A stretch of 64,000 nt of DNA. It comes from Ramazzottius varieornatus (lineage: Eukaryota > Animalia > Tardigrada). Each line of letters begins with the position of its first letter. Positions within the stretch are counted from its first letter, which is position 1. Where the stretch lies: the NCBI GenBank assembly GCA_001949185.1, contig BDGG01000001.1, positions 1,298,263 through 1,362,262 on the forward strand, written 5' to 3'. A program made the translations under genes and the position numbers. Below, piece after piece: positions 17,337 through 63,340 of the stretch. Below the pieces are notes generated by a model. That model did no database searches and was not told where the DNA came from. It was given only the letters and a program-made list of their open reading frames with translations.

Positions 17337-20300
17337 ATGAAACCACCACGTCTACTATCGTTGACGTTGAAGCCATGGATATTATGTACTGTAGTCGGTA
17401 AGATACTAAATCATCAATTTGAATTCTTTTTAGAAGTCCAATACCATTCTGCACCATTCTCCATCGAACATGTCTGTGGTATTTCCACTTTAGTCACGTT
17501 GTACTTTCAGTTGCTTATTTATTGGTTGAGCCCATCGTTGCCAGACGGAGTAGCGGTGGAAGCGTCGGCGGTGGGCGGATGAGTTCGGGTAGGTCCAGCT
17601 TTGGAGGTGGCTTTGGTGGCGGTAGATCAAGCTTTGGTGGCGGTGGACGTTCATCCTGGGGAGGCGGCGGTGGCGGAGGCTTTGGTAACCGTGTCAGCTT
17701 CGCCTCGCCTGCCCGCTCATCTGGGGGTCTATTCGGTGGCTCTTCAGCAACCCGTTATGGTTCTTCAGGATCCTCGGGATCCTCTGGTCGATACGGTGGT
17801 GGACTGGGCTCGTCTTCCGCTACACGCTATGGCAGTTCGTCCGGTGCGGGATTTGGAAGTAGCAGCCCGTTGAGATCATCCAGTGGGTTTGGTGGTGCAT
17901 CAGCGACGCGGTACGGCTCGAGCAGTGGAGCGGGTGTTGGAGCGACAAGATATGGATCGTCTTCGGGATCAAAGATCGGAACTGGGACGGCGTTAGGTGC
18001 TGGCGCAGCAGGGGGCGCTTTGGGCACATATGGCGCTACTCGGCTCGGTAAGACATACTGCTGTTCTGCCTACAGTACAACTACACAAATGAAAACGCGT
18101 TCGGTAATAAATTCATAACCGACAAATGCCCTAATGTTAACCAAACGCAAGAGACAGTCACAGTTCAAAGCTCCTTATGATATGCTTTGAAGACCTCCAA
18201 AAATGTTTTGATAGAAGTTGGGAGAATATCGAATATCGTCTTGTGCAGCATTAAAGTTTCATAGTTTTTGAATTTTTCCAGGTGGAGGTTCATTCGGCAG
18301 TTCGGGTGCTCGTGCAGGTCTCGTGGGTTCCGGTACCCGATACGGTTCGCAAAGTAGCACTGGTGGGATATTCGGCAGCTCCGGTGCCGCAGGCGCCACG
18401 CGTTACGGCTCGTCCGCTCCGTCAGGTCGCGGATCACCTACCGATTCCATCCGCAATCGCTTCTCCGGCTCAGGTGTCCGTCAACCGGTCGCCGGTAACG
18501 CAAGACCCAACTACGGTTTCGGAAGCAGTAACACACTGGGCAACCGACCAGCTGTCAACACCCCACGCGCATCAGCTTCCTCACCGTCCAAAGTGGTTTA
18601 CTCTCCCACGTACAACACTTACAACTCCTATGGACGAGGCTCATCATTTGGTGGGCTCGGGTCTTCGGGATATGGAGGACTAGGAAGCAGTTACGGTGGA
18701 CGACGAGGCTTCGGTAAGCGAACGTCTTTACTAATTATAATATTAACATATGTTTCAAAGGCAAAATCGACTACAGTATCAAGAAAATGCCGCATGCGTC
18801 GAAATTAGCGTGGCCAGAATGTTCATCGAATATCGCACTCCAATAAATCACTTTCGTGGGGTTATTTCAACAGAATTGACTGTTTGTTTTTGTACTGAGG
18901 TACAGTACTAAATGATGGTGTTTTAGGCACTGGCTCGATGATAGCCACTGGTTTAGCTGCTGGTGTTGGTGGATACTACCTGGGTCGCGCCATGGGCTCT
19001 CTGTACCGGCCATACGGTTTTGGTTACGGTTACCCCGGCATGGGCTACGGTTATGGTGGATATGGCTATGGAGGCATGGGCTACGGCGGAATGGGCTACG
19101 GTGGGGGCATGTGTGACACTTGCTCCATGGGCGGCTACGTGCCTTATCGCGATCGTTACCGCGATTATTACCCAACCGACAACCAACAAGTCATTACCAA
19201 CCCAGCTAACAACAACAACAACAACGTTAATACCCAAGGTGCGGTGGCCAGTGTGAATCAGCCAGCGATAGCGGCAACGGAAGCACCTCAAAAAAGCGTC
19301 GATCTGTGCATGCTGGCTCGATGGAACCGTGAGCTACCATTCGCGGAACTGCCTAACATGGCACTGGACTTCCTGGCCACGAACCTCATTTCGGGTAACA
19401 CGACGAGTGACAAAGCCAAGTTCATGTACGAGTTCCTGACCGTGTCGGTGGAAGCTTATGAGAAGTACAACAGTTCCGCGGATATTTTCACCATACCGGC
19501 GAGTTTTGATATCAACACGTGCAACATCAAAGTCTCCAAGGTACGAAACAATTGGGACGACGGCAAATGTATTCAACCCGACCGAATGACAGGTGGCGCA
19601 TGTACCCATTGTGAATGGCTGAAAGTGTGAGCCACTTGGGAAAATGATACGGATCGAACTATCAATATTTACCCACGTCTCATTACTTCACCGTAAACTT
19701 TTTCACTAAATACACTGACGCATTCTGTTTCTTCGTAGACGCAACTGGTGAACGCCGCCACTGCGGTCCAACAGGAAGAACCCATCATGACGTCACTACG
19801 ACACATGCTATCTCTGTATTCGAACAAAAGCACGGACGCGGATGATCTGACAGGTAAGATTACTCCAACTCTACAGAGCAATTAACCGTGTAATTATAAA
19901 TTCTGGGCTTCCTCTTGTAGATGTGGTGAACGCAGCCAAGGCCTGTCTGCCCCAAGGTCCCAACATTACCAATCCGGAAGTTCTACCCTGCATCGACTTC
20001 TCCCTCAGTCCCGACCAGATGCTCAAGCTTGAGACACCTCATTCCATGTTTGGTAGCGCCGAGATCTGTCGAAGACAGCTATCGCCCGACATGTTCAAGT
20101 GCGTGCCCAAAGTCGTCGGAAATCCCTGCAAGATGGAACACTTGGCCACGCTGAACCTCTTCGCCAGGAACTTTTACTTGTGCAGCGAAGCCATCGGCGA
20201 AAACACTGTCGCTGGTCTGGAAGCACATTCTAGTGGCCCAGCGGCTGGTGGTGTACCTTCGGTGGCGGGACGAAGAGTGGAAAGTACCACATCGAGCGTC

Positions 20301-50663: not shown

Positions 50664-52271
50664 ATGGAAAGTGTTTCACGGACCCTGTGGACCAGGGTGT
50701 TTTTGGTGAGCGGAAGCATCCTTCTCTGTTTACATCGCAGTGACGCACTAGGCCAGCGACCATTCAGCGATGTTGGAGCTGCTGGTGCTCCTGGATACAG
50801 CTGCACACTGAGCACTGTGTGCTCTGAAACCCGCAGTTGTCCTGTCGGCTGCCGATGTACTCTTCGAGGGATTCCCTGCCTCTCTGGTAAAGTCTAGTAG
50901 TTACTTCATCCTTGTGCCTTCGGGAAAAAAATGTAGCTGCCTCTTGGATCTATGGCACAACTATGCCGTTGTATAGGTTCGGTGTGCTCGTCGTTTAGTG
51001 GAGCATCGTCCCCGCTCTTTTGTTTGTGCCCAACGAGCACGATTTTCGATTCTACCACTAACTCGTGTGTGGAAGTAACCGCTCCCACTGTCAGGCCTGA
51101 TCCTGGTCCAGCTCCCAATATTTCTGTAATCAACCCCAAAGTCCCCGGTCTGCAGGCGACCGTCCGGCGATGCTTCCAAACACCTCAACCTGATGATGAC
51201 GAGGAAACTCGTCGCCTGAATTTACGGCTAGTCGTAAGTTCAGACAATACATACTGTCTGAGGATTTCATACCCTAGAACCATAGCTTGAGGATGTCAGC
51301 CACTCTACTTGACAACGTGTGTGTTGTTTCAGGTGACAAACAGCGTTTCATTGGATTTCTGTGAGGTGAAAGTGGTGGAAACCTATCTCGGCATATCCAG
51401 AAAAAAACTACGAAAATTCAACAAATGTTCAAAACGTGACTTTTTAGTGGACGTCTCCGGTGTTCAGTTTGTTGATATCAACAAAGGACTGAAGTGGTTC
51501 GTTCTAACGCACGAAGGACCGCCCGAAGGACCGAGAGGCGGCTACCTTATTCAGCGTTACAGCATCACTTGTACCGGCAAAAATGGACTTACTTCCAACC
51601 CCGTTCAATTTGTCGTAAGTGCTGCTTTCACGACGGAGTGAGTGCTTTGATTGCTTTGCCTGCTGAAATCAAATCTTAGGAAATTTAGCGGTTCATTTGG
51701 TGTATTTCAGGTCGCATTTCCAAGCTGTGCGAACTGCAAGTTCCAACGTGATAGTTGTCCCGTTGATGAATCCCGCCCAGGCAGACAAGGAAACGGCTGC
51801 GAACGAGGGCGGGTAACACGTCCGCCAAGTGCCCGGCAGTGTCTGCAATTCTATTTCGGAAACAACGCACCCAAATGTCCTAAACTTTACTTGAGAACGG
51901 ATAGGCTAACTGTTACTGGAAGAAACACTGTGTCAGCTGTGATGGAGGGCAGCAGGTGGACACCTGATAGCTTTGACAACATAGTGCACAGCGCAGAAGT
52001 TCCGATGAACATTCAGCCCGAGAAACTCATGAACCAACTACAACAACTAGGACAGACCGAGGACGAAGATATCGTGACACAACCGCCGGAGCATCTAGTG
52101 GATGATGACCAGAACGATGAGGACGATACTACAGCGGACACCACAACAACAACCACAACACAAGCACCTATCGAACAAACAGATGACGAACAGGATGACG
52201 AAGAGGAAGAAACCACAACGCACACCCCAAACCACCAGGACAACGTGGACGATGACGACGGTGAAGAGTAG
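50664..52271 (+). CDS. Secreted Cys-rich protein with acidic D/E/T tail, paralog 1 (4 exons), unknown family
   Basis: Signal peptide; Cys-rich N-terminal module; GPPEGPRGGYLIQRYSITC; VAFPSCANCKFQRDSCP; TATAAAAG at 50568. Confidence 0.8.
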
Positions 52272-53861
52272 GAACCGATTTGCGCTTTTGAAGGGCCCAG
52301 TGGTTCATCGGTTAATTTAAACTGCTGTTTCCTTCTCCTGGATAGCAACCTAAGTTCAAGTTTACTGTATCTGCATCACGTGCAAGGAAGTTTTATAAAC
52401 AGACCTTATATCTCACGATGCCGTGTGGGGTTTTTCCGTAGGCTATTGAGGTGTGTGTGGCGTTGTTCACACTGTTATGATCTGCAGCATCACATTTCAA
52501 AACACCCATTTCGCTCGAAGCTATATATACGTTAAACCCACTCAGTTAAGTGCCTGTCCGCGGTGCTACTCGAAGATCCGATTGAGACCAACGAGCAAGG
52601 TAGTTGTTGACCGCAGGCTCATACTTCTGATCATTGTCTTCGCGATGGTTTGCATTGGCTCGTCGAAATCGATTAGTTAAGAGGAAAAGTCGCTAACCGC
52701 CGTCTCCTTTGCTCGCTGGGCCTGAAGATGTCCGCTCGAACGAACAATAGCGCTCGGAGACTAAGAAACTGACCAACGGCTGATTAATCATGTCCTGTGT
52801 AGCATTTTAAAATTTTTAAGGCCATTTCGTAGACGTGATTATGAAGCGAGAGTGCTGGATTGGGTGGATATGGCTAGGAATGGAGTTCTACATTTACTAT
52901 CAAAGTTTGAAACCGACCAGATGGTTAGTTCAAATGTTAGCCGGTTTCGGTACCTTCCATAATTTTCATAGTTTGCGGAAATGTGGATTATGGCGCGCAC
53001 CCGAATTCTACAACACTTGCTGCCTAAGTGGTGTATGCATCTCACAGGACCATCGGATAGCGAATTTTGGTATTCATCACCGAGAAATCCAGTGTTTTCC
53101 ACAGCTGGTAGGCAAAATCCTAGATCCTCTTAGTGATTTGTCTAATGCTTTATGCAGAATGTATGGTTTTCCTCTCCTTTGTTTTATTTAGTTTTTTCTG
53201 TGTACAGCACCGTATCTGCGCCTGTGGGCTAACCTCTAATATACGGTAAAGGAATCCTTTCAATAAAAATCATATTTCTTGTGGCTGCCTTTCATGCTGA
53301 AGAACTGGTCCCGGAATGGGCGTCGGCAGTAAAAGAAAATTCGAGGAGCCATTTTCGATTATGCCAAGACCACAGAATTGCTCAAAAAGTGTAGAAGATG
53401 ATGCGCCATTTTAACCAGCTCGTCACGACCGATGGCTTTCTCGCTTCACAAGGCCAGCTGCCCGTCGTTTCTACCCGACCCGAGAAGTGCTTCGAGTAAG
53501 TGCAACGTCTCCCGCAATCAGTTAGCATGGTTTTTCCATCAGATTCACTGTTTCCGCGTCATGTCCATGCGATTGTCGAACTCATTAACGTTAGTGGCCC
53601 AAAGCACTGTACATCGCTGTAACAACGATTGTAGAGCAAAATTCGTATAATTAGACGAATATATTATCATGACAATAGCGAACACCGAAAACCAGCGCTT
53701 AATTGCTACACATAATGCGCGACCTTAATTGCAGCGTCGCAACATGCTGCATCTTCCGTTGAAGACGCTCACAAGGCTCATAAACACAAGCACAATGGGC
53801 TTTTCAGTGTTGGTGTTTTTCTGACCATAAGTTGTGCATGAATGCGAAGCTGTCAGACGCG

Positions 53862-55637
53862 ATGAGGTTCGACGCTGTTTTCCTCTTCACCTTCGGAATA
53901 ATCGGTGTTGCTCTTATCCATGCGCTGGACATACGGCCCTTCGATCAGTTCGGGGATGATGTAATCAGTGCTGCAGGTTACACTTGCCCAGCTGCATGCA
54001 CCAGCACACGAAGTTGTAGGCCGGGTTGTGCCTGCTTCCTTCCGGATATCGCGTGTGCTGGTAAGACTATCCACCAACATACAGTAATCCCATGTTACAC
54101 CACTCTTTACCTGTTTGCTCTTTCCAATCCAGGTGGGGCAGTCTGCACCACGTTTCCCGGAGGCAGCCGCCAACTATTTTGCCTTTGCCCGGGGGGTACC
54201 AGACAAGTCGGTAGCAGCTGTGTTACAAACGGTACCGTCACACCTTCAACCACGCCAGCGACCACCAAAGCTCCCACCTGCAGTGGCTCCTTTTTTCAAC
54301 GCTGCTTCCCCAGGAATCGGTATCATTGCTATAAGTGTAAAAGACAGTCATTTTGCGAACTGACCAGCCCAGAAAATAGCTGCCCTTGCCAGTCGCGCAA
54401 ACGTCGAATATGCTTCATCATCAAGATTCGTTCAGGTGCAGCCGCTCTTTGGAGCAGCCAGAACAAACGACAGGTTGGAAGCACATCGGCGGTCACGATT
54501 GATAACTTGCCTGTAGTTATTCGCCAGTGCAGCCAGACCAGCAGGCCACAGGGCAGTGAAACCAGCAAGCTTAATCTGCGTATCGAGGTAACAGTGCGGA
54601 AAATTAGCAAAAAAACTTTTTTTTTCTGCGTGACTGAAAAGCTTGTTTGGATATTAGTTTGAGCCTGGAGTGGACGTCAGAAGCTGCACCACAAAACTCC
54701 GGGAGACTTTTCTTTTCATATCGGAGCGCGCCTTGAAGACACGCAATTTCTGCACCGCAAAAGACTTTCTGTATAACAACAGGGAAAACCATATCTCTAC
54801 CCGATCGTTTGTTGGGGTCAAAGTCAAAGAAAGCCTCGGACGGGGACAATTCTATCTGACCAGACCTGGACCACCGGAAGGACCTAAAGGCGGGTTCTTG
54901 GTTCAGCGTTACAGTGTTTATTGTACGAATACCGATAGCGAAAGATCCAACGCCGAAGACTTTTACGTAGGTCCAGTAACTCGTACATTACGATAAGCTT
55001 AAAGGTACACTTGCCAATATGTTCTCAGAATTTATCAGATCGCGACATGAGTTTTTAGGTGGCGTTCCCCAGCTGCCGATCGTGCAGGTTTCAGCGTCGT
55101 GACGATAACTGTCCTGATGCAAAGCGTCACCCCCGACGGGCAGGAAACGGTTGCAGGGACGACGGTTTGCGCCTTGGCGGATCGGACGACGATACATCTG
55201 CTGCCATCACGCCCTGCCTGCCGTTTTTCGGTTGTACTCCCGATCCAAACGACATCATTACACTAAGCGATGAACCTCGAGACGGACCCATCCAGTCTGC
55301 AGACTTCGAGGACTTTGACAACGAGCCCTCGGGGGATGACCAGCTGGACGACTCTGCATCGGATGATGCGCAGTCCAGAAAGGCGGAAGTTTCCCTCGTG
55401 ACTACCACGGAGCAATCAAGCCAAGCCGAAGAGGACAGTGCCACATCGCAGCTAGGAGCAGCCGATACCGACGAAGACAGCGAAGATACCGCTGCTGATG
55501 CAGACGCAGCATCTACCGCATCTCAAGCATTCGCTGAGAGCAACAAGTTCGAGTCCTCCGACAACGGAGCCGAAGTCAGCGGGTCAGTGAAGAGCCAGTC
55601 GTCGTTCGAAGAGTCTTCGTCATCGGAAGACAAGTAA
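53862..55637 (+). CDS. Secreted Cys-rich protein with acidic D/E/S tail, paralog 2 (4 exons), unknown family
   Basis: Signal peptide MRFDAVFLFTFGIIGVALIHA; GPPEGPKGGFLVQRYSVYC; VAFPSCRSCRFQRRDDNCP; same intron positions as paralog 1. Confidence 0.8.
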
Positions 55638-58246: not shown

Positions 58247-59555
58247 ACTGAAGTATCTGCAAACAAACTAATCCGATAGAAAGGCGCCAGTACTTGTTTT
58301 TAACCGTACAGCGGACCAACGCACCTTTTGAAATATCTCGATATCAAAAAGAATCCTGAAAAGTAATAGTAATTTGGGTGAGCTTTCAGATGAACCGATT
58401 ATTAGTGCAACGGATGAAATGATAACGAGTTTGTGGAAGCGGAAATATCGACCAGGATTCACGGGATACGAGCTAAGCCAACATCTGCATGAATTGTATT
58501 GAACGCATTGTGCAGCAAAAAACGCGAGACCTGGGTTTTGACTTGCACACTTGAATGTAGTGTGGAGCTACTAACAAGCAGGAAGGAAGACGATATATAC
58601 TGGTTGTGAAGGATGGAGGGAAACCGATACAGAGCGGAAGACCATGAGCGGTCTGTGTATGGAGAAGTACGACTGGATGCCAGCTTACGTCGGGAGGTGG
58701 TACCATAGCACGCAGTGAAGCCGGAAAAGTAGGTCTTGGCATGCAGTCAACTGACTCCATGTCGGTTTCCTATGTATCGATCTTGGTTGAGCTTGCGGTC
58801 CGTGGATGTTATTTAATGAGTCTCTGACGACCAGTTACTGTAAGCCGGCAAGAGAATTACACGCTTTTAAATTGGTTGATATGAAACTGCGATGCTATTT
58901 TTCTGCAGTCGTTAACGCCCACATAATTGGAATGTGTACGCATGGTACAGTAGACACCTCAGTATATATACTGTACGTACAACGTGGTCGTAAATTTTTA
59001 AAGTACAAATTTTCTGCAGGGCCTCGCTCGGATCAAGTATGGTAAGTCGTGAAAGTCTGCACGGTGTTCGGAAATTTTGAGATCGCTCGAACATTTCTTG
59101 TCTCGGATACCGCTGTGTACAAAAAGTCGGAAAAGGAAAGAAGCCGAAGGAAGAGAACACTTTTGCCTAGTGTATCACCTACGTGCGCGGAACTAAAATT
59201 GATTCACAGAACAAGGAACCAACGACAGTGAAGGCAGATTCTGGCTTCACCACCCGTTACCTCGTACTTAGAACGCGAAAATTGAGCTCTGAAATTGGGC
59301 GTTAGATGGAGCCAGATGGATGCAGCCAATCGGATTTGCGCATTCGGTAAACAGTAATTACATTTCTTCTCGTATCTGACATTTTTCTTTATAGTCACTC
59401 AAATCAGAACCCTAATAACCACGTAACATGCGTTGATAGTGCACAATGGTTCCATATCACACACGGCATTTTTCGAACTATTGATAGAGTACCAGCAGCA
59501 ACGAAATAGAGTAGTAGCGAACACGAATGTGCGTGGTGGTCTCAGGAACGTAAAA

Positions 59556-61178
59556 ATGGCCACGCCGATCCTTTTTGTAAAGTTCGGTCTAGTGCTCATC
59601 CTTCTTTCGTTGTTAGCGCCGAAGTCAGACTGCGCTGAGTACGTTCTAACTCCGGACGACAACTCTTTCCTCGACGACCTCCAGGAGCGAGCCTTTCGGT
59701 TCTTCTATGAGCACAGCAACCCCGTGAACGGTCTGACGCTGGACCGGGCATTTACTGATGGGAGACCTCCTCATGGCAAGGACAGTCACACCAACATTGC
59801 CAGCACGGCATGTACAGGTTACGCTCTTGTGGCCTATTGTATTGGGGTAGAACGTGGATGGATCACTAGGGCGGAGGCCATCGCCCGAACGACAGCTACC
59901 CTCACTCACTTCGCCCATCACGCCTACAATATCCACGGCTGGTTCTACCACTGGATCAACCAAGCAACGGGCGAACGAGAATGGAAATCGGAAATCTCGT
60001 CCATTGATACCGCCTTACTGCTAGGGGGTATCCTGACGGTTCGCCAGTATTTTGCAGAAGATAAGAACATAGTTTGTCTAGCCACTGAAATCTACGAAAG
60101 AGTCGATTTTCAGTGGATGTTGAATGGACACAAGAGTTGGCTGTCCCATGGATGGATACCGGCTGGGGTGGGCTGGGATAACGAACCGCACCCAGATAAA
60201 TTTCTGGAGAGCCGCTGGACAGACTATTCGGAGCAGACCATGCTGAACTTGTTGGCCATTGCGTCACCTAAATACCCCATAGACTGGAAAACATGGTACG
60301 GTATTTCAAAGCAGTCACACCGGCTCGCTCCTTGAAAAGATCGATGTAGTTACGAGCTCGTGAGTTAACTTCGGATTGGTGGTGTTTCTTCAGGTATGAC
60401 TTGAAAAGAAACTTTACCGAGTACGGTGGTTACAAATTCATGGCTGCTGTTCCTCCACTCTTTATTCACCAGTACTCGCATGCCTTTTTCGACTACCGAA
60501 ACAAACGCGAGCGCTATGAACAGTTCAACATGGATTACTTCCAGAACTCCATCACGGCAACCGAAGCGCAACGAGCTTTCTTCATGAGCGAGGAAACCCG
60601 CAAGGACTTTCCTACGTACAGCGAAAACATTTGGGGAATGACGGCTTCCGACACCGCGGCAGGGTACGATCCACTTTTTCTTCATGAGTCGGTTAACACC
60701 ATCGAAGGCCGATCAGTTACAGTATGTTTACAGGTACAGAGCATGGGGCGCTCCACCGCGCGATCCCGAAATGAACGGGACAGTGGTGCCATGTGCGGCT
60801 GGTGGGTCGTTGATGTTTGCGCCTGAAATCACTCTATCGGCCCTGAAAGCCATGAAGAGCCAGTACGGAGAGTCCATGGGTATCTATAAACGCTACGGAT
60901 TCACCGATGCTTTTAATCCAGATCCCCGTGCCAATTGGGTTAATCAGTACGTCCTTGGTATTGATGTGGGTATCACACTGCTGTCGGCGGAAAATCTTCG
61001 AACGGGAAACGTATGGAAATGGTTCATGACGAACCCCGAAGCCACAAATGCCTTAAAAATGGTCCGAATTTTGCCAAGCGGGACAGACCCTGCTCCCTCG
61101 TCGGCTACCACAATAAAGCCAATCTTCGCTCTGGTTATCGTACTGCTTGAATTGTGGCATGCTACAAGTACTATGTAG
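59556..61178 (+). CDS. Bacterial-type glycoside hydrolase of the 'glycoamylase' (PF10091)/GH144 beta-1,2-glucanase-like family; secreted with GPI-like tail; exons 59556-60295, 60394-60663, 60734-61178
   Basis: Motifs FLDDLQERAFRFF, GVERGWITR, HGWFYHW, EISSIDTALL, RWTDYSE, PLFIHQYSHAF, WGMTASD, GTVVPCAAGGS, YGFTDAFN and GIDVGITLLSAEN. Two GT-AG introns join in frame. Confidence 0.9.
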
Positions 61179-61394
61179 ATTTTTGTGTTTTTATGTCTGC
61201 TGAAAGTGATCATTGAAAGTGGTTGGTTTCGACATTATCCGCGTTTCGAGGCTTTGGCAGATTGAGAGCTCGTTAGACTATATCACTTGAAGTAAGGTGG
61301 AATAAGCGTGCTGCACGGAATGCTTTGTAGTGTGATAAGCCACCACATGGACAGACCAGCTCTGACCTGGCGCCTGAAAGATAAGACCGCTTTG

Positions 61395-63340
61395 TCAGAG
61401 GTTTGTGTCTGTGAATTGATTATTGTTTCCTGACGGCGCTGACCTGAAGGTTACGAACCCTCCGACGGTCAGAACGATCATTGTCAAGATGGCAGCCGAT
61501 ACCGCCACGGTGACACTGTAGGTCCGCCAACTTTGCTGAGCAGGAGTGCATGGACCTTCGAATCCCGAAAACCCGCAACGCGGCACATCAGGCGGCCAAG
61601 CAGTGGACTGATTAACTTTTCCAAGCGAGCTTTTGTCGAGCCATATGTAGGAGTGACTTGTTGGGTCGTAGCTGGCAGACAGCTAAACACATGAAGCGGC
61701 TGTACTACTCCAGATTATCAGTCGTTCAGGACCATTCAGGACCCAGAAGACCGTGTGACTAACCTGCATCTTCTGCGTGGATAAATCAAACGTGAAAATG
61801 CGTAGCTCGGCTGGACGGGACCCGCTTTCGTCAATGTAAGTCGGTCCCAGAGTCAAGTCGAAGGTGCGATTTCGTATGCTTTGGCGTAAGCGACGTCCGC
61901 TACAGGCTGAACCAGTTCGGCCCATATTTCGTAGATCTAATAATGTCTCATTGACCATGGCCGCGAAAATTTCTACACTGTTGAGGGTCTCTCGTGTTGT
62001 GTACAGATCGAGGGGTGAGGTTCCGTTTTCGTAGGTGGCGTTGTACAGTTTCATGGATTGCTCGGCAAGCTTCTGTCCCAGCAGGTGGTATTGTCCGTCC
62101 GCAATTTTCGTGGTGATCACGATGACGGTATGATACATTAGCGGATCCTTTCCCAGAGAAAGTCAGCCCATAAACAGATCGAGACTGGTGACCGGATAAA
62201 AATCAGCCATTCTTACCTTAGGCGGGGGGTGATCGAACCATTCCACGTGACCATAGAGATTTGATTGGACTGATTGTACTACGACGAACGCCTGCAAAAG
62301 CGTAGTCTTGTCAATAGCATGCATGTGCAGGATCGAGCTGGGGAGCTTACGTAATCTTGGCAGGATATATTTAGACTTCTTCCATTCCTCTGCAATAATG
62401 CTCTTTACGGGATATTTTAGGGCTTTTCGTAACATTTATAGTATTTTATACAATCAGCTTACCAATACTCTTAGCGCCGTTTTCGTGTCGGACAAGATGA
62501 AAATCACTGTAATGGCAACATACTGTAAGGAATTGCTTTGTTCGCTTACTTCGATAGCCCGATCGTGGCAGTTCTTTACGAAGACCCTTTATCACGAAGC
62601 AAATTGAAAGTGGACGGATGGGGAACCGGACCCCAGCATGCTGCTTACATGGCGAGCACTCGCACCAATGGGCCATGCAAGCTATGAACTGCTTCGTGAC
62701 TATTCTTACCTAGGCCCCTTTGCGTACTAAGTAAATCAGTCCTTACACACCTTTGGGCGAGGTCAGTCCGGAGTATTCGGGGACAAGTGCACGTACACAT
62801 GTGGGTGGTTACTAAAAGTTCATATTGCATAAGCGATATGCTTACCTCTACTCCTAGCCTGCGCGCTCTGTAAGCTTCCGGAGATAGTAGCTTCGTCAGA
62901 ACCATCAAAGTTTAGTATCGCGACTGAGTAAGGCCAGCTACTGCTGGATAAGCTAGCTGCCAATATTTCATTTGCCAACAACCGGTAGAAATCTGTCGAC
63001 ACTACGGAGTGGTCCAGTAAAAGCGACACGTGGTGCCAGTCAAAATTTTGTGTCAGTTTCAAGGCCGCTTGCCCAAAGCTCTTGTACGTTCCCACCATGG
63101 GAACTGCAGTTGGTGCTACTCGGTCGTTGAAGGTTTCTGCCGGCGCTACCGCCCTAAAAACTTCACAGGTGAAACAGTGTACACAGGTTAACCGTCGTAA
63201 TTTGCCAGTACTCACGATGAGAATAAGAGAACATCCCAGCCTAGAAATTCACAGCGTCATAACATTCTGTATCGAGTACGGCCGGGAGACACGATTCACC
63301 TGCCGCAAGAAGTGGAGAAACGATTTGCCCACCGCAGCCT
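61395..63340 (-). CDS. ANF-receptor ligand-binding-domain single-pass receptor lacking kinase/cyclase (NPR-C-like); 5' end unresolved
   Basis: Motifs WDVLLFSS, FDWHHVSLLLD, ARSR|VIFILS, SGRRLRQSIRNRTFDLTLGPTYIDESGSR and WPPDVPRCGF..GPC, then one TM segment and a stop about 16 aa later. Confidence 0.75.
62611..62682 (-). other. tRNA-derived pseudogene or SINE head in an intron
   Basis: Minus strand shows an A-box-like TGGCCCATTGG, then gctcgcc, then a perfect T-arm tgggg-tccggtt-cccca. The acceptor and anticodon stems are not intact. Confidence 0.4.

What the first reader, a model, noticed from the sequence alone, without database searches (positions are those of the whole stretch)
59556..61178. 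Domesticated bacterial-type GH144/'glycoamylase' hydrolase retooled as a probable GPI-anchored surface enzyme
Seen: the full motif set of the bacterial PF10091 family, two spliceosomal introns, an N-terminal signal peptide and a C-terminal GPI-like signal (SGTDPAPSS...IFALVIVLLELW), all flanked by animal genes. Known: characterised members are bacterial endo-beta-1,2-glucanases, and beta-1,2-glucan is mainly a bacterial polymer (cyclic or osmoregulated periplasmic glucans). Inference: horizontal transfer gave this animal a cell-surface or gut enzyme for digesting or sensing microbial beta-1,2-glucans, an activity not generally described in animals.
Basis: partly seen in the sequence, partly recalled or inferred. 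Interest (0 to 1): 0.85.

Follow-up and report, generated by a model that had tools for sequence, protein, structure and literature searches.

The report
Tardigrade beta-1,2-glucanase taken from soil bacteria
This is an intact, intron-bearing tardigrade gene for a bacterial-type sugar-cutting enzyme (GH144) that came from soil Acidobacteria, probably together with its partner beta-glucosidase; the transfer itself was already listed in a 2017 supplement, but what the enzyme is and how it is paired and anchored was not discussed there.

Summary
Window 59556-61178 (+) is a three-exon gene with two GT..AG introns of 98 and 70 nt. It is the annotated RvY_00471 of Ramazzottius varieornatus (484 aa) and is single-copy on a 9.3-Mb scaffold.

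- **Family:** it matches PF10091, and its best solved relatives are the GH144 endo-beta-1,2-glucanases XcSGL and CpSGL. The proposed acid (E226), proposed base (D151) and clan-defining F270 and Y338 are all kept.
- **Origin:** it and its Hypsibius exemplaris ortholog are sisters (99/93 support), nested inside Blastocatellia/Pyrinomonadaceae (Acidobacteriota) sequences.
- **Prior knowledge:** Yoshida et al. 2017 (S4 Data) already list the Hypsibius ortholog as a high-likelihood, expressed HGT with RvY_00471 as its homologue. They give no functional reading.
- **Paired donor genes:** in 66 of 80 donor-type bacterial loci a GH3 beta-glucosidase sits directly upstream of, or is fused to, the GH144.
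- **Partner in tardigrades:** tardigrades hold GH3 genes of the same bacterial origin. In Hypsibius one GH3 gene carries the gene ID and protein accession next to the GH144 gene's.
- **Anchor tail:** both enzyme types carry a signal peptide, a Ser/Thr-rich stalk and a short hydrophobic C-end that looks like a GPI signal.

The scan had already noted the GH3 side on other DNA of this genome.

The parts
59556..60295 (+). Exon 1 (residues 1-246 plus two bases of W247). [quoted passage not shown]
   Evidence: PDB matches for exon 1 alone: XcSGL 3.7e-26, CpSGL 2.6e-21.
60006..60008 (+). Codon GAT for D151, which aligns with the proposed general base E142 of CpSGL (Asp in XcSGL).
   Evidence: Alignment, numbering, residue roles from PMC12102758.
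60165..60194 (+). Loop insertion of about 10 residues (about residues 204-213) specific to R. varieornatus. It is absent from Hypsibius and from all 21 aligned bacterial relatives.
   Evidence: Alignment A1. pLDDT is low there (60-66).
60231..60233 (+). Codon GAG for E226, which aligns with the general acid E211 of CpSGL (E239 of XcSGL).
   Evidence: Invariant in A1.
60296..60393 (+). Intron 1: 98 nt, GT..AG, phase 2, GC 0.47.
60394..60663 (+). Exon 2 (residues 248-336). It contains F270, which aligns with CpSGL F268.
   Evidence: PF10091 at 6.9e-19.
60664..60733 (+). Intron 2: 70 nt, GT..AG, phase 2, GC 0.43.
60734..61178 (+). Exon 3 (residues 338-484 plus stop). It contains Y338 (CpSGL Y330) and D414 (CpSGL D400).
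   Evidence: PF10091 at 1.8e-28.
61077..61175 (+). Tardigrade-specific C-terminal extension (residues 452-484). It has a Ser/Thr/Pro-rich linker with small residues S459-S460-A461 as a possible omega site, then the hydrophobic stretch I467-W478, then HATSTM. It looks like a GPI-attachment signal.
   Evidence: Bacterial relatives end near residue 451. Hydropathy. The model shows a disordered linker then a helix at 466-483.
61395..63215 (-). Convergent downstream neighbour, not part of the gene: a multi-exon ANF_receptor-like ectodomain plus one transmembrane exon. Its stop codon lies 217 bp from the GH144 stop.
   Evidence: Colinear weak Pfam hits to profile positions 84-133 and 262-351; ORFs.

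Best explanation
The gene encodes a functional GH144-family endo-beta-1,2-glucanase. A tardigrade ancestor of Ramazzottius and Hypsibius acquired it from a Blastocatellia/Pyrinomonadaceae-like soil acidobacterium. It most likely arrived on the same piece of DNA as the GH3 beta-glucosidase that lies directly upstream of it, or is fused to it, in those bacteria. After transfer both genes gained spliceosomal introns, eukaryotic signal peptides and a Ser/Thr-rich stalk ending in a short hydrophobic C-terminus. The enzymes are therefore probably exported and tethered to the outer face of a cell membrane by a GPI anchor, plausibly on gut epithelium. The inferred mechanism is inverting hydrolysis. 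E226 would act as general acid through the substrate's 3-OH at subsite +2, and D151 would act as general base. The enzyme would cut linear or cyclic beta-1,2-glucan from bacteria or Chlorella-type algae into sophoro-oligosaccharides, which the GH3 enzymes would then trim to glucose.

Shown here: the gene structure, the family, the retained residues, the bacterial nesting, the tardigrade ortholog, the bacterial GH3-GH144 linkage, and the consecutive gene IDs and accessions of the two Hypsibius genes. Inferred: the substrate, the GPI anchoring, the tissue, the digestive role, and a single co-transfer event.
For: - **Family and fold:** PF10091 scores above cut-off on exons 2 and 3. Best PDB relatives of P0001 are the GH144 enzymes XcSGL 8xul (5.7e-52) and CpSGL 5gzh (2.2e-41). 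Other SGL-clan families score far lower: PgSGL3 1e-8, the cyclic glucan synthase domain 6e-4. The AlphaFold model (pLDDT 82, pTM 0.83) matches 8xul and 5gzh at target-normalised TM about 0.8.
- **Residues:** E226, D151, F270, Y338 and D414 align with CpSGL E211, E142, F268, Y330 and D400. Their roles come from PMC12102758.
- **Constraint:** 116 of 123 columns invariant in 21 bacterial relatives are kept in R. varieornatus, and 119 of 123 in Hypsibius.
- **Origin:** top hits are Acidobacteriota/Pyrinomonadaceae at 51-64% identity. In the careful ML tree the two tardigrade proteins are sisters at 99/93 inside that clade. Quick trees agree.
- **Integration:** two introns, a 9.3-Mb scaffold, single copy.
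- **Prior record:** the Hypsibius ortholog bHd07027.1 is listed as a high-likelihood HGT with expression above 1 TPM and 3 introns.
- **Pairing in bacteria:** GH3 lies upstream on the same strand in 38 of 80 bacterial loci and is fused in 28 of 80.
- **Pairing in tardigrades:** the best bacterial hits of the R. varieornatus GH3 are GH3-Fn3-GH144 fusions at about 60% identity. Hypsibius GH3 OQV12556 and GH144 OQV12557 have consecutive accessions on one 222-kb scaffold, and their gene IDs bHd07026 and bHd07027 are consecutive. Tardigrade GH3s form one clade (100).
- **Tails:** a stalk plus hydrophobic C-end occurs in both GH144s and in 5 of 6 named tardigrade GH3s, and in one metagenome GH3 that groups with them. 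PIG-T and a C13 peptidase are present in the genome.
Against: - No enzyme assay exists for this protein or for any member of its Pyrinomonadaceae subclade. Identity to characterised GH144 enzymes is only 26-30%.
- Both tardigrade branches are long (0.64 and 0.49 against a median of 0.15), so long-branch attraction or a change of function cannot be excluded. W278, invariant in the bacterial relatives, is F in both tardigrades.
- The GPI reading rests on inspection only. The hydrophobic stretch is interrupted by E476 and followed by six polar residues.
- In R. varieornatus the GH144 gene (C1) and the GH3 genes (C7, C14) are not linked.
- The GH3 and GH144 trees agree only in part on the nearest bacterial relatives.
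- Hypsibius adjacency is inferred from consecutive IDs; its DNA could not be fetched.
- No RNA evidence for R. varieornatus could be obtained.
Confidence: 0.62

Rival explanations
1. The enzyme is real and bacterial in origin, but it is secreted or held by its C-terminal helix as a membrane-spanning anchor. On this reading the tail is not a GPI signal.
For: AlphaFold draws an 18-residue helix at 466-483. Six polar residues follow the hydrophobic stretch. Two R. varieornatus GH3 paralogues lack any such tail, so soluble forms exist in the family.
Against: The uninterrupted hydrophobic run is only 9-12 residues, with no basic cytoplasmic stop-transfer segment. The same layout of small residues, a short spacer and a short hydrophobic end recurs in the Hypsibius ortholog and in most GH3 partners. 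The GPI transamidase subunit PIG-T is encoded in the genome.
Confidence: 0.25
2. The protein kept the GH144 fold but now acts on another substrate, or serves as a non-digestive sensor or immune lectin for microbial glucans.
For: Tardigrade branches are long. W278F is shared by both tardigrades at a column invariant in the bacterial relatives. R. varieornatus has its own 10-residue loop insertion. Linear beta-1,2-glucans act as immune elicitors in plants (title and abstract of PMC11630039).
Against: The proposed acid and base and the clan-defining F and Y are intact. 94-97% of bacterial-invariant columns are kept. The linked GH3 partner argues for a degradative pathway. All characterised GH144 and SGL-clan hydrolases are specific for beta-1,2-glucan (PMC12102758).
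Confidence: 0.15
3. Ramazzottius and Hypsibius each acquired the gene separately from similar Acidobacteria, or the GH3 and GH144 genes arrived in separate events.
For: By raw similarity the Hypsibius protein is closer to bacterial proteins (up to 68%) than to the R. varieornatus protein (58-59%). Intron counts differ: 2 here against 3 in the Hypsibius model. GH3 and GH144 are unlinked in R. varieornatus.
Against: Sister grouping at 99/93. Both share W278F. Both share the same kind of C-terminal extension, ending H-x-T..M. Yoshida et al. place them in one orthogroup. The GH3 and GH144 genes have consecutive IDs in Hypsibius, in the same order as in the bacterial operon.
Confidence: 0.08
4. The stretch is bacterial contamination or an assembly artefact.
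For: Best hits are bacterial at about 60% identity.
Against: Two canonical introns restore invariant codons. The gene lies 1.36 Mb inside a 9.3-Mb scaffold. Its composition is close to its flanks. An ortholog exists in a second tardigrade genome. No bacterial sequence is closer than 64%.
Confidence: 0.01

Closest known systems
GH144 endo-beta-1,2-glucanases: XcSGL (Xanthomonas campestris XCC2207, PDB 8xul) and CpSGL (Chitinophaga pinensis Cpin_6279, PDB 5gzh/5gzk)
   Same: Same Pfam family (PF10091) and the same (alpha/alpha)6 barrel. The general acid Glu, the acidic base candidate and the clan-defining Phe and Tyr are all kept. The local motif E-I-S-S-I-D-T matches the XcSGL type (E-L-S-S-V-D-T).
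   Different: Only 26-30% identity. The host is an animal. The gene has introns, a eukaryotic signal peptide and an added Ser/Thr-rich linker with a hydrophobic C-terminus. No activity data exist.
Standalone and GH3-fused GH144 proteins of Blastocatellia/Pyrinomonadaceae (for example the MAG protein H7Z37_03520, P0096, and the roughly 1170-aa GH3-Fn3-GH144 fusions such as P0173)
   Same: 51-64% identical to the R. varieornatus protein over the whole catalytic domain (up to 68% for the Hypsibius ortholog). The tardigrade pair nests among them. They are linked to the same type of GH3 that tardigrades also carry.
   Different: The bacterial proteins end right after the domain, use bacterial signal peptides ending in ...AQ, and have no introns. 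None has been characterised.
Tardigrade HGT candidates bHd07027.1 and bHd07026.1 in Yoshida et al. 2017 (PLoS Biol, S4 and S5 Data)
   Same: bHd07027.1 is listed with RvY_00471.1, this very gene, as its R. varieornatus homologue. It is classed as a prokaryote-derived, expressed, high-likelihood HGT.
   Different: There it appears only as 'DUF2329' in a table. The main text holds none of the words glucosidase, glycoside, DUF2329 or Acidobacteria, so the enzyme family, the operon-like pairing and the anchor tails go undiscussed. Their 2017 tree held no close Pyrinomonadaceae homologues for the GH144.
PF10091 'glucoamylase-like' genes laterally transferred to anaerobic ciliates (PMC13198582)
   Same: A eukaryote acquiring a PF10091 gene from prokaryotes.
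   Different: The recipients are protists, not animals. It is only a table entry there, and no link to this clade has been shown.

Membership tests
GH144 / Pfam PF10091 (endo-beta-1,2-glucanase family, clan GH-S) | Match to the PF10091 profile above the gathering score | tested here: met
   Exon 2 scores 68.7 bits and exon 3 scores 100 bits against a cut-off of 27. The three exons are colinear over profile positions 3-221. The whole-genome scan finds only this locus.
GH144 / Pfam PF10091 (endo-beta-1,2-glucanase family, clan GH-S) | Closer to GH144 than to the other SGL-clan families (GH162, GH189, GH192-194) | tested here: met
   By sequence: 8xul 5.7e-52 and 5gzh 2.2e-41, against PgSGL3 1.1e-8 and the TiCGS domain 6.4e-4, with no hit to TfSGL. 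By fold, GH144 chains rank 1-9.
GH144 / Pfam PF10091 (endo-beta-1,2-glucanase family, clan GH-S) | (alpha/alpha)6-barrel fold | tested here: met
   Model pLDDT 82.3, pTM 0.83. Foldseek probability 1.00 with target-normalised TM 0.79-0.82 to standalone GH144 chains.
GH144 / Pfam PF10091 (endo-beta-1,2-glucanase family, clan GH-S) | General acid Glu (CpSGL E211 / XcSGL E239) and acidic base candidate (CpSGL E142) | tested here: met
   E226 and D151 align with them. Roles come from PMC12102758. CpSGL D135 and D139 are Ser here, as in the active XcSGL.
GH144 / Pfam PF10091 (endo-beta-1,2-glucanase family, clan GH-S) | Clan-defining Phe and Tyr (XcSGL F286, Y367; CpSGL F268, Y330) | tested here: met
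   F270 and Y338, both invariant in A1. Y338 lies in a stretch of the model with low pLDDT.
GH144 / Pfam PF10091 (endo-beta-1,2-glucanase family, clan GH-S) | Hydrolysis specific for beta-1,2-glucan with inversion of the anomer | not testable with these tools
   Needs recombinant protein and substrate.
Horizontally acquired, domesticated gene of an animal | Nested within a clade of non-metazoan sequences with support | tested here: met
   The surrounding clades have 98-100 support, and the named members are all Acidobacteriota.
Horizontally acquired, domesticated gene of an animal | Physically integrated in the host genome with host gene features | tested here: met
   Two GT..AG introns, a 9.3-Mb scaffold, and a convergent multi-exon receptor-like neighbour 217 bp away.
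Horizontally acquired, domesticated gene of an animal | Persistence in related species | tested here: met
   Ortholog BV898_13201 in Hypsibius exemplaris, sister at 99/93. Same orthogroup in Yoshida 2017.
Horizontally acquired, domesticated gene of an animal | Transcription and correct splicing | tested here: inconclusive
   The Hypsibius ortholog is marked 'hiexp' (above 1 TPM) in Yoshida 2017 S4 Data. Splice sites are supported only by the restored invariant W247 and G337.
GPI-anchored surface protein | N-terminal signal peptide plus a C-terminal signal (small omega residues, a short spacer, a hydrophobic end of about 10-20 residues, no cytoplasmic domain) | tested here: inconclusive
   By inspection and hydropathy the layout fits: S459-S460-A461, spacer TTIKP, then I467-W478. 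It recurs in the Hypsibius ortholog and in the GH3 partners. No dedicated predictor was available, and E476 and the HATSTM end are atypical.
GPI-anchored surface protein | Host has the GPI transamidase | tested here: met
   PIG-T (Gpi16, PF04113) exons on C2 at 2e-47. Peptidase_C13 loci on C6 and C1; these were not resolved into PIG-K versus legumain.
GPI-anchored surface protein | Release by PI-PLC or chemical proof of the anchor | not testable with these tools
   Experiment needed.

The most novel reading that the evidence does not exclude
One piece of acidobacterial DNA carrying a two-gene beta-1,2-glucan operon (GH3 beta-glucosidase followed by GH144 endo-glucanase) entered a eutardigrade ancestor. 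Both genes were then domesticated in parallel: introns, signal peptides, mucin-like stalks and GPI signals. The GH3 gene was later amplified to about ten copies. This would give tardigrades their own membrane-tethered pathway from beta-1,2-glucan to glucose. It would be the first such pathway in an animal, possibly aimed at the cyclic beta-1,2-glucans of Chlorella-type algae and of bacteria they feed on.
Probability: 0.4. Interest if true: 0.72.

Novelty: new member of a known kind. Interest (0 to 1): 0.52.

Why it matters
The literature read here describes beta-1,2-glucanases (GH144, GH192-194) as bacterial and GH162 as almost exclusively eukaryotic; no paper found here ascribes one to an animal.

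If the protein is active, tardigrades have an animal-encoded route to digest a glucan that bacteria use as periplasmic or cyclic glucans and that Chlorella also makes.

The paired GH3-GH144 origin would be a rare case of a bacterial operon-like unit surviving transfer into an animal genome. Both genes would have been refitted in the same way for the eukaryotic secretory pathway. That makes 'how are transferred bacterial genes domesticated' directly testable with two linked genes and their about ten paralogues.

It also gives the uncharacterised Pyrinomonadaceae GH3-GH144 fusions a predicted function.

Tried and rejected
- Exons were searched by reference one at a time. Full-length work used the database record P0001, which a search returned and which each exon translation matches exactly.
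- **Literature blanks:** no paper holds tardigrade together with GH144 or the locus tags. GH144 together with 'horizontal gene transfer' gave only microbiome papers. No supplement text is held for Hashimoto 2016.
- **Contamination rejected:** see the rival explanations.
- **GH3 remnant beside the gene in R. varieornatus rejected:** tblastn of tardigrade GH3 against the window gives nothing better than E = 0.41, and PF01915 hits lie only on C7 and C14.
- **Close unnamed hits as possible tardigrade genes rejected:** P0026, P0083, P0096 and P0002 all have bacterial-type ends and no C-terminal extension.
- **Upstream neighbours:** Pfam scans of the upstream ORFs gave nothing.
Full report
**What is in the sequence.**
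- Reading window 59000-61800 and its ORFs gives a three-exon gene on the + strand.
  - Exon 1 is 59556-60295, exon 2 is 60394-60663 and exon 3 is 60734-61178.
  - The introns are 98 nt (60296-60393) and 70 nt (60664-60733). Both are GT..AG and both are phase 2.
- Each exon translated in its own frame occurs exactly in the database protein RvY_00471 of Ramazzottius varieornatus (P0001, 484 aa).
- The two codons split by the introns give W247 and G337, which are invariant among 23 aligned homologues. The splice sites are therefore well supported even without reads.
Exon-wise searches were made by reference, and full-length work used the database record P0001.
- The genome is 55.8 Mb in 200 contigs. 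The gene lies at about 1.36 Mb on a 9.33-Mb scaffold and is the only PF10091 locus in the assembly.
- Exon GC is 0.49-0.52 and intron GC is 0.43-0.47, against a window mean of 0.47. The bacterial relatives have a median gene GC of 0.55.

**What family it belongs to.**
- The three exons match Pfam PF10091 colinearly; exons 2 and 3 score far above the cut-off.
- Against solved structures, the best sequence matches of P0001 are the two characterised GH144 endo-beta-1,2-glucanases.
  - XcSGL (8xul) scores 5.7e-52 and CpSGL (5gzh) scores 2.2e-41.
  - Members of the sister families of the SGL clan score many orders of magnitude worse.
- An AlphaFold model built on alignment A1 has pLDDT 82 and pTM 0.83. 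It matches the GH144 chains first, with target-normalised TM about 0.8.
- I used the residue roles set out by Nakajima et al. 2025 (PMC12102758) and the HMMER alignment to CpSGL, whose chain numbering equals the paper's. The mapping is shown in the table below.

| CpSGL residue | Role | Residue here |
|---|---|---|
| E211 | general acid | E226 |
| E142 | proposed general base | D151 |
| F268 | clan-defining | F270 |
| Y330 | clan-defining | Y338 |
| D400 | conserved; mutant keeps activity | D414 |
| D135, D139 | mutation lowers activity | Ser (as in active XcSGL) |

- Of 123 columns invariant in 21 bacterial relatives, R. varieornatus keeps 116 and Hypsibius keeps 119. Both share one derived change, W278F.
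- This is the signature of an enzyme still under purifying selection.

**Where it came from.**
- The closest proteins in 5.8 billion are unnamed metagenome proteins and MAG proteins labelled Acidobacteriota, Blastocatellia or Pyrinomonadaceae.
  - Identity is 51-64% to the R. varieornatus protein and up to 68% to the Hypsibius one.
  - The only named eukaryotic hit is BV898_13201 of Hypsibius exemplaris.
- A scan of one genome per bacterial species returned 80 loci. All but one carry Acidobacteriota-type titles; the exception is a MAG labelled Heliomicrobium.
- In the careful IQ-TREE run (LG+C20+F+G4 PMSF, 48 rows) the two tardigrade proteins are sisters with 99 ultrafast bootstrap and 93 SH-aLRT. 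They sit inside a Pyrinomonadaceae-type clade, with long terminal branches of 0.64 and 0.49.
- Quick trees with distant outgroups and with other taxon sets give the same placement.
- The two tardigrade proteins also share a C-terminal extension that no bacterial relative has.

**Already known.**
- Yoshida et al. 2017 (PLoS Biol, S4 Data) list the Hypsibius gene bHd07027.1 as follows.
  - InterPro domain DUF2329, the older name of this family.
  - HGT index 315.5 and tree class 'prokaryotes'.
  - Expression above 1 TPM and 3 introns.
  - 'High-likelihood HGT: phylogeny, expression and perdurance'.
  - R. varieornatus homologue RvY_00471.1.
- The main text of that paper holds none of the words glucosidase, glycoside, DUF2329 or Acidobacteria.
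- I found no paper that links tardigrades with GH144.
- PF10091 transfer into anaerobic ciliates has been tabulated.
- So the transfer is catalogued, while the functional reading is not.

**The partner enzyme.**
- Several bacterial hits carried GH3 domains as well. The representative of the 50% identity cluster that best matches the tardigrade protein is a 1130-aa GH3-Fn3-GH144 fusion.
- In the 80 bacterial loci a GH3 gene lies directly upstream on the same strand in 38 and is fused in frame in 28.
- The R. varieornatus genome holds GH3 loci on C7 and C14.
  - One of them, RvY_12018, is 61% identical to the GH3 part of that fusion protein in a single uninterrupted match.
  - Its best bacterial hits in the large database are mostly GH3-Fn3-GH144 fusions of Pyrinomonadaceae at about 60% identity.
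- Tardigrade GH3s form one clade with full support. That clade also holds one metagenome protein with a tardigrade-type tail.
- In Hypsibius the GH3 protein OQV12556.1 and the GH144 protein OQV12557.1 have consecutive accessions on the same 222,042-bp scaffold. Their gene IDs in Yoshida's set, bHd07026.1 and bHd07027.1, are also consecutive, and both are flagged as high-likelihood HGT.
- The order GH3 then GH144 is the bacterial order.
- Two bacterial GH3s, P0343 and P0351, appear to share a contig with the GH144s P0122 and P0118; this is inferred from identical source and contig length. All four lie close to the tardigrade clades in their respective trees. Other bacterial lineages are placed differently in the two trees, so congruence is only partial.
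- I read this as probable co-transfer of an operon-like pair, followed by separation and GH3 amplification in Ramazzottius.
- Earlier notes of this scan describe the GH3 genes of this genome in the same terms and mention a partner enzyme. I reached the link before reading them.

**The ends of the protein.**
- The N-terminus has a signal-peptide-like hydrophobic core.
- Residues 452-484 are absent from the bacterial relatives. They consist of a Ser/Thr/Pro-rich linker, small residues S459-S460-A461, a five-residue spacer, a 12-residue hydrophobic stretch and six polar residues.
- The Hypsibius ortholog has a longer Ser/Thr-rich stalk and an 11-residue hydrophobic end.
- Five of six named tardigrade GH3s, and the metagenome GH3, have the same design.
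- PIG-T and C13 peptidase genes are present in the genome.
- This fits a GPI-attachment signal better than a transmembrane anchor, but no predictor or experiment was available.

**Function.**
- All characterised GH144 enzymes act on beta-1,2-glucan.
- Pairing with a GH3 fits a known bacterial theme: in Listeria innocua a GH3 beta-glucosidase sits in a beta-1,2-glucan gene cluster (abstract of PMC4757417).
- The substrate is usually called bacterial, but cyclic beta-1,2-glucans are also reported from Chlorella pyrenoidosa (PMC11842490).
- From my own knowledge, laboratory R. varieornatus is fed Chlorella, so an algal substrate is as plausible as a bacterial one.
- A digestive role on the gut surface is inference.

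**Limits.**
- There is no RNA evidence for this species.
- The Hypsibius DNA could not be read.
- There is no GPI predictor result and no biochemistry.
- Branch lengths are long, so grouping by long-branch attraction is not fully excluded. The shared tail and the shared W278F argue against it.

Noticed in passing
window 61395-63215 (-): The convergent neighbour has two exons with weak but colinear ANF_receptor matches, followed by an exon encoding a single transmembrane helix and a very short tail. It looks like a receptor ectodomain gene without a kinase or cyclase part within the window.
   Followed up: partly
G000 C7:432977-1120162 and C14:845260-846204 (loci L083-L088): About ten bacterial-type GH3 beta-glucosidase loci, several in tandem on C7. 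L086 (RvY_12018) reads as one 847-aa open frame. L085 and L088 show 1 and 4 in-frame stops inside the match, which may be introns or decay.
   Followed up: partly
protein P0327 (JGI metagenome contig, 5.3 kb): A GH3 that is 70% identical to the Hypsibius GH3 and carries a Ser/Thr-rich stalk and a hydrophobic C-end. It is probably a gene of an unsampled tardigrade sitting in an environmental metagenome.
   Followed up: partly
bacterial loci L003-L082: In Blastocatellia/Pyrinomonadaceae the GH3 and GH144 genes are adjacent in 38 species loci and fused into one protein of about 1170 aa in 28. The fused forms cluster in the GH144 tree, so fusion or fission seems to have happened only a few times.
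   Followed up: partly
window 60296-60301 and 60664-60669: Both introns start with GTACG after a G-ending exon and both are phase 2. Whether this reflects a tardigrade donor-site preference was not examined.
   Followed up: no
window 50664-55637 and 18927-19320: Other first-reader notes on this window concern an unrecognised secreted family and a prion-like core. The ORFs at 53832-55637 gave no Pfam match in my scan.
   Followed up: no
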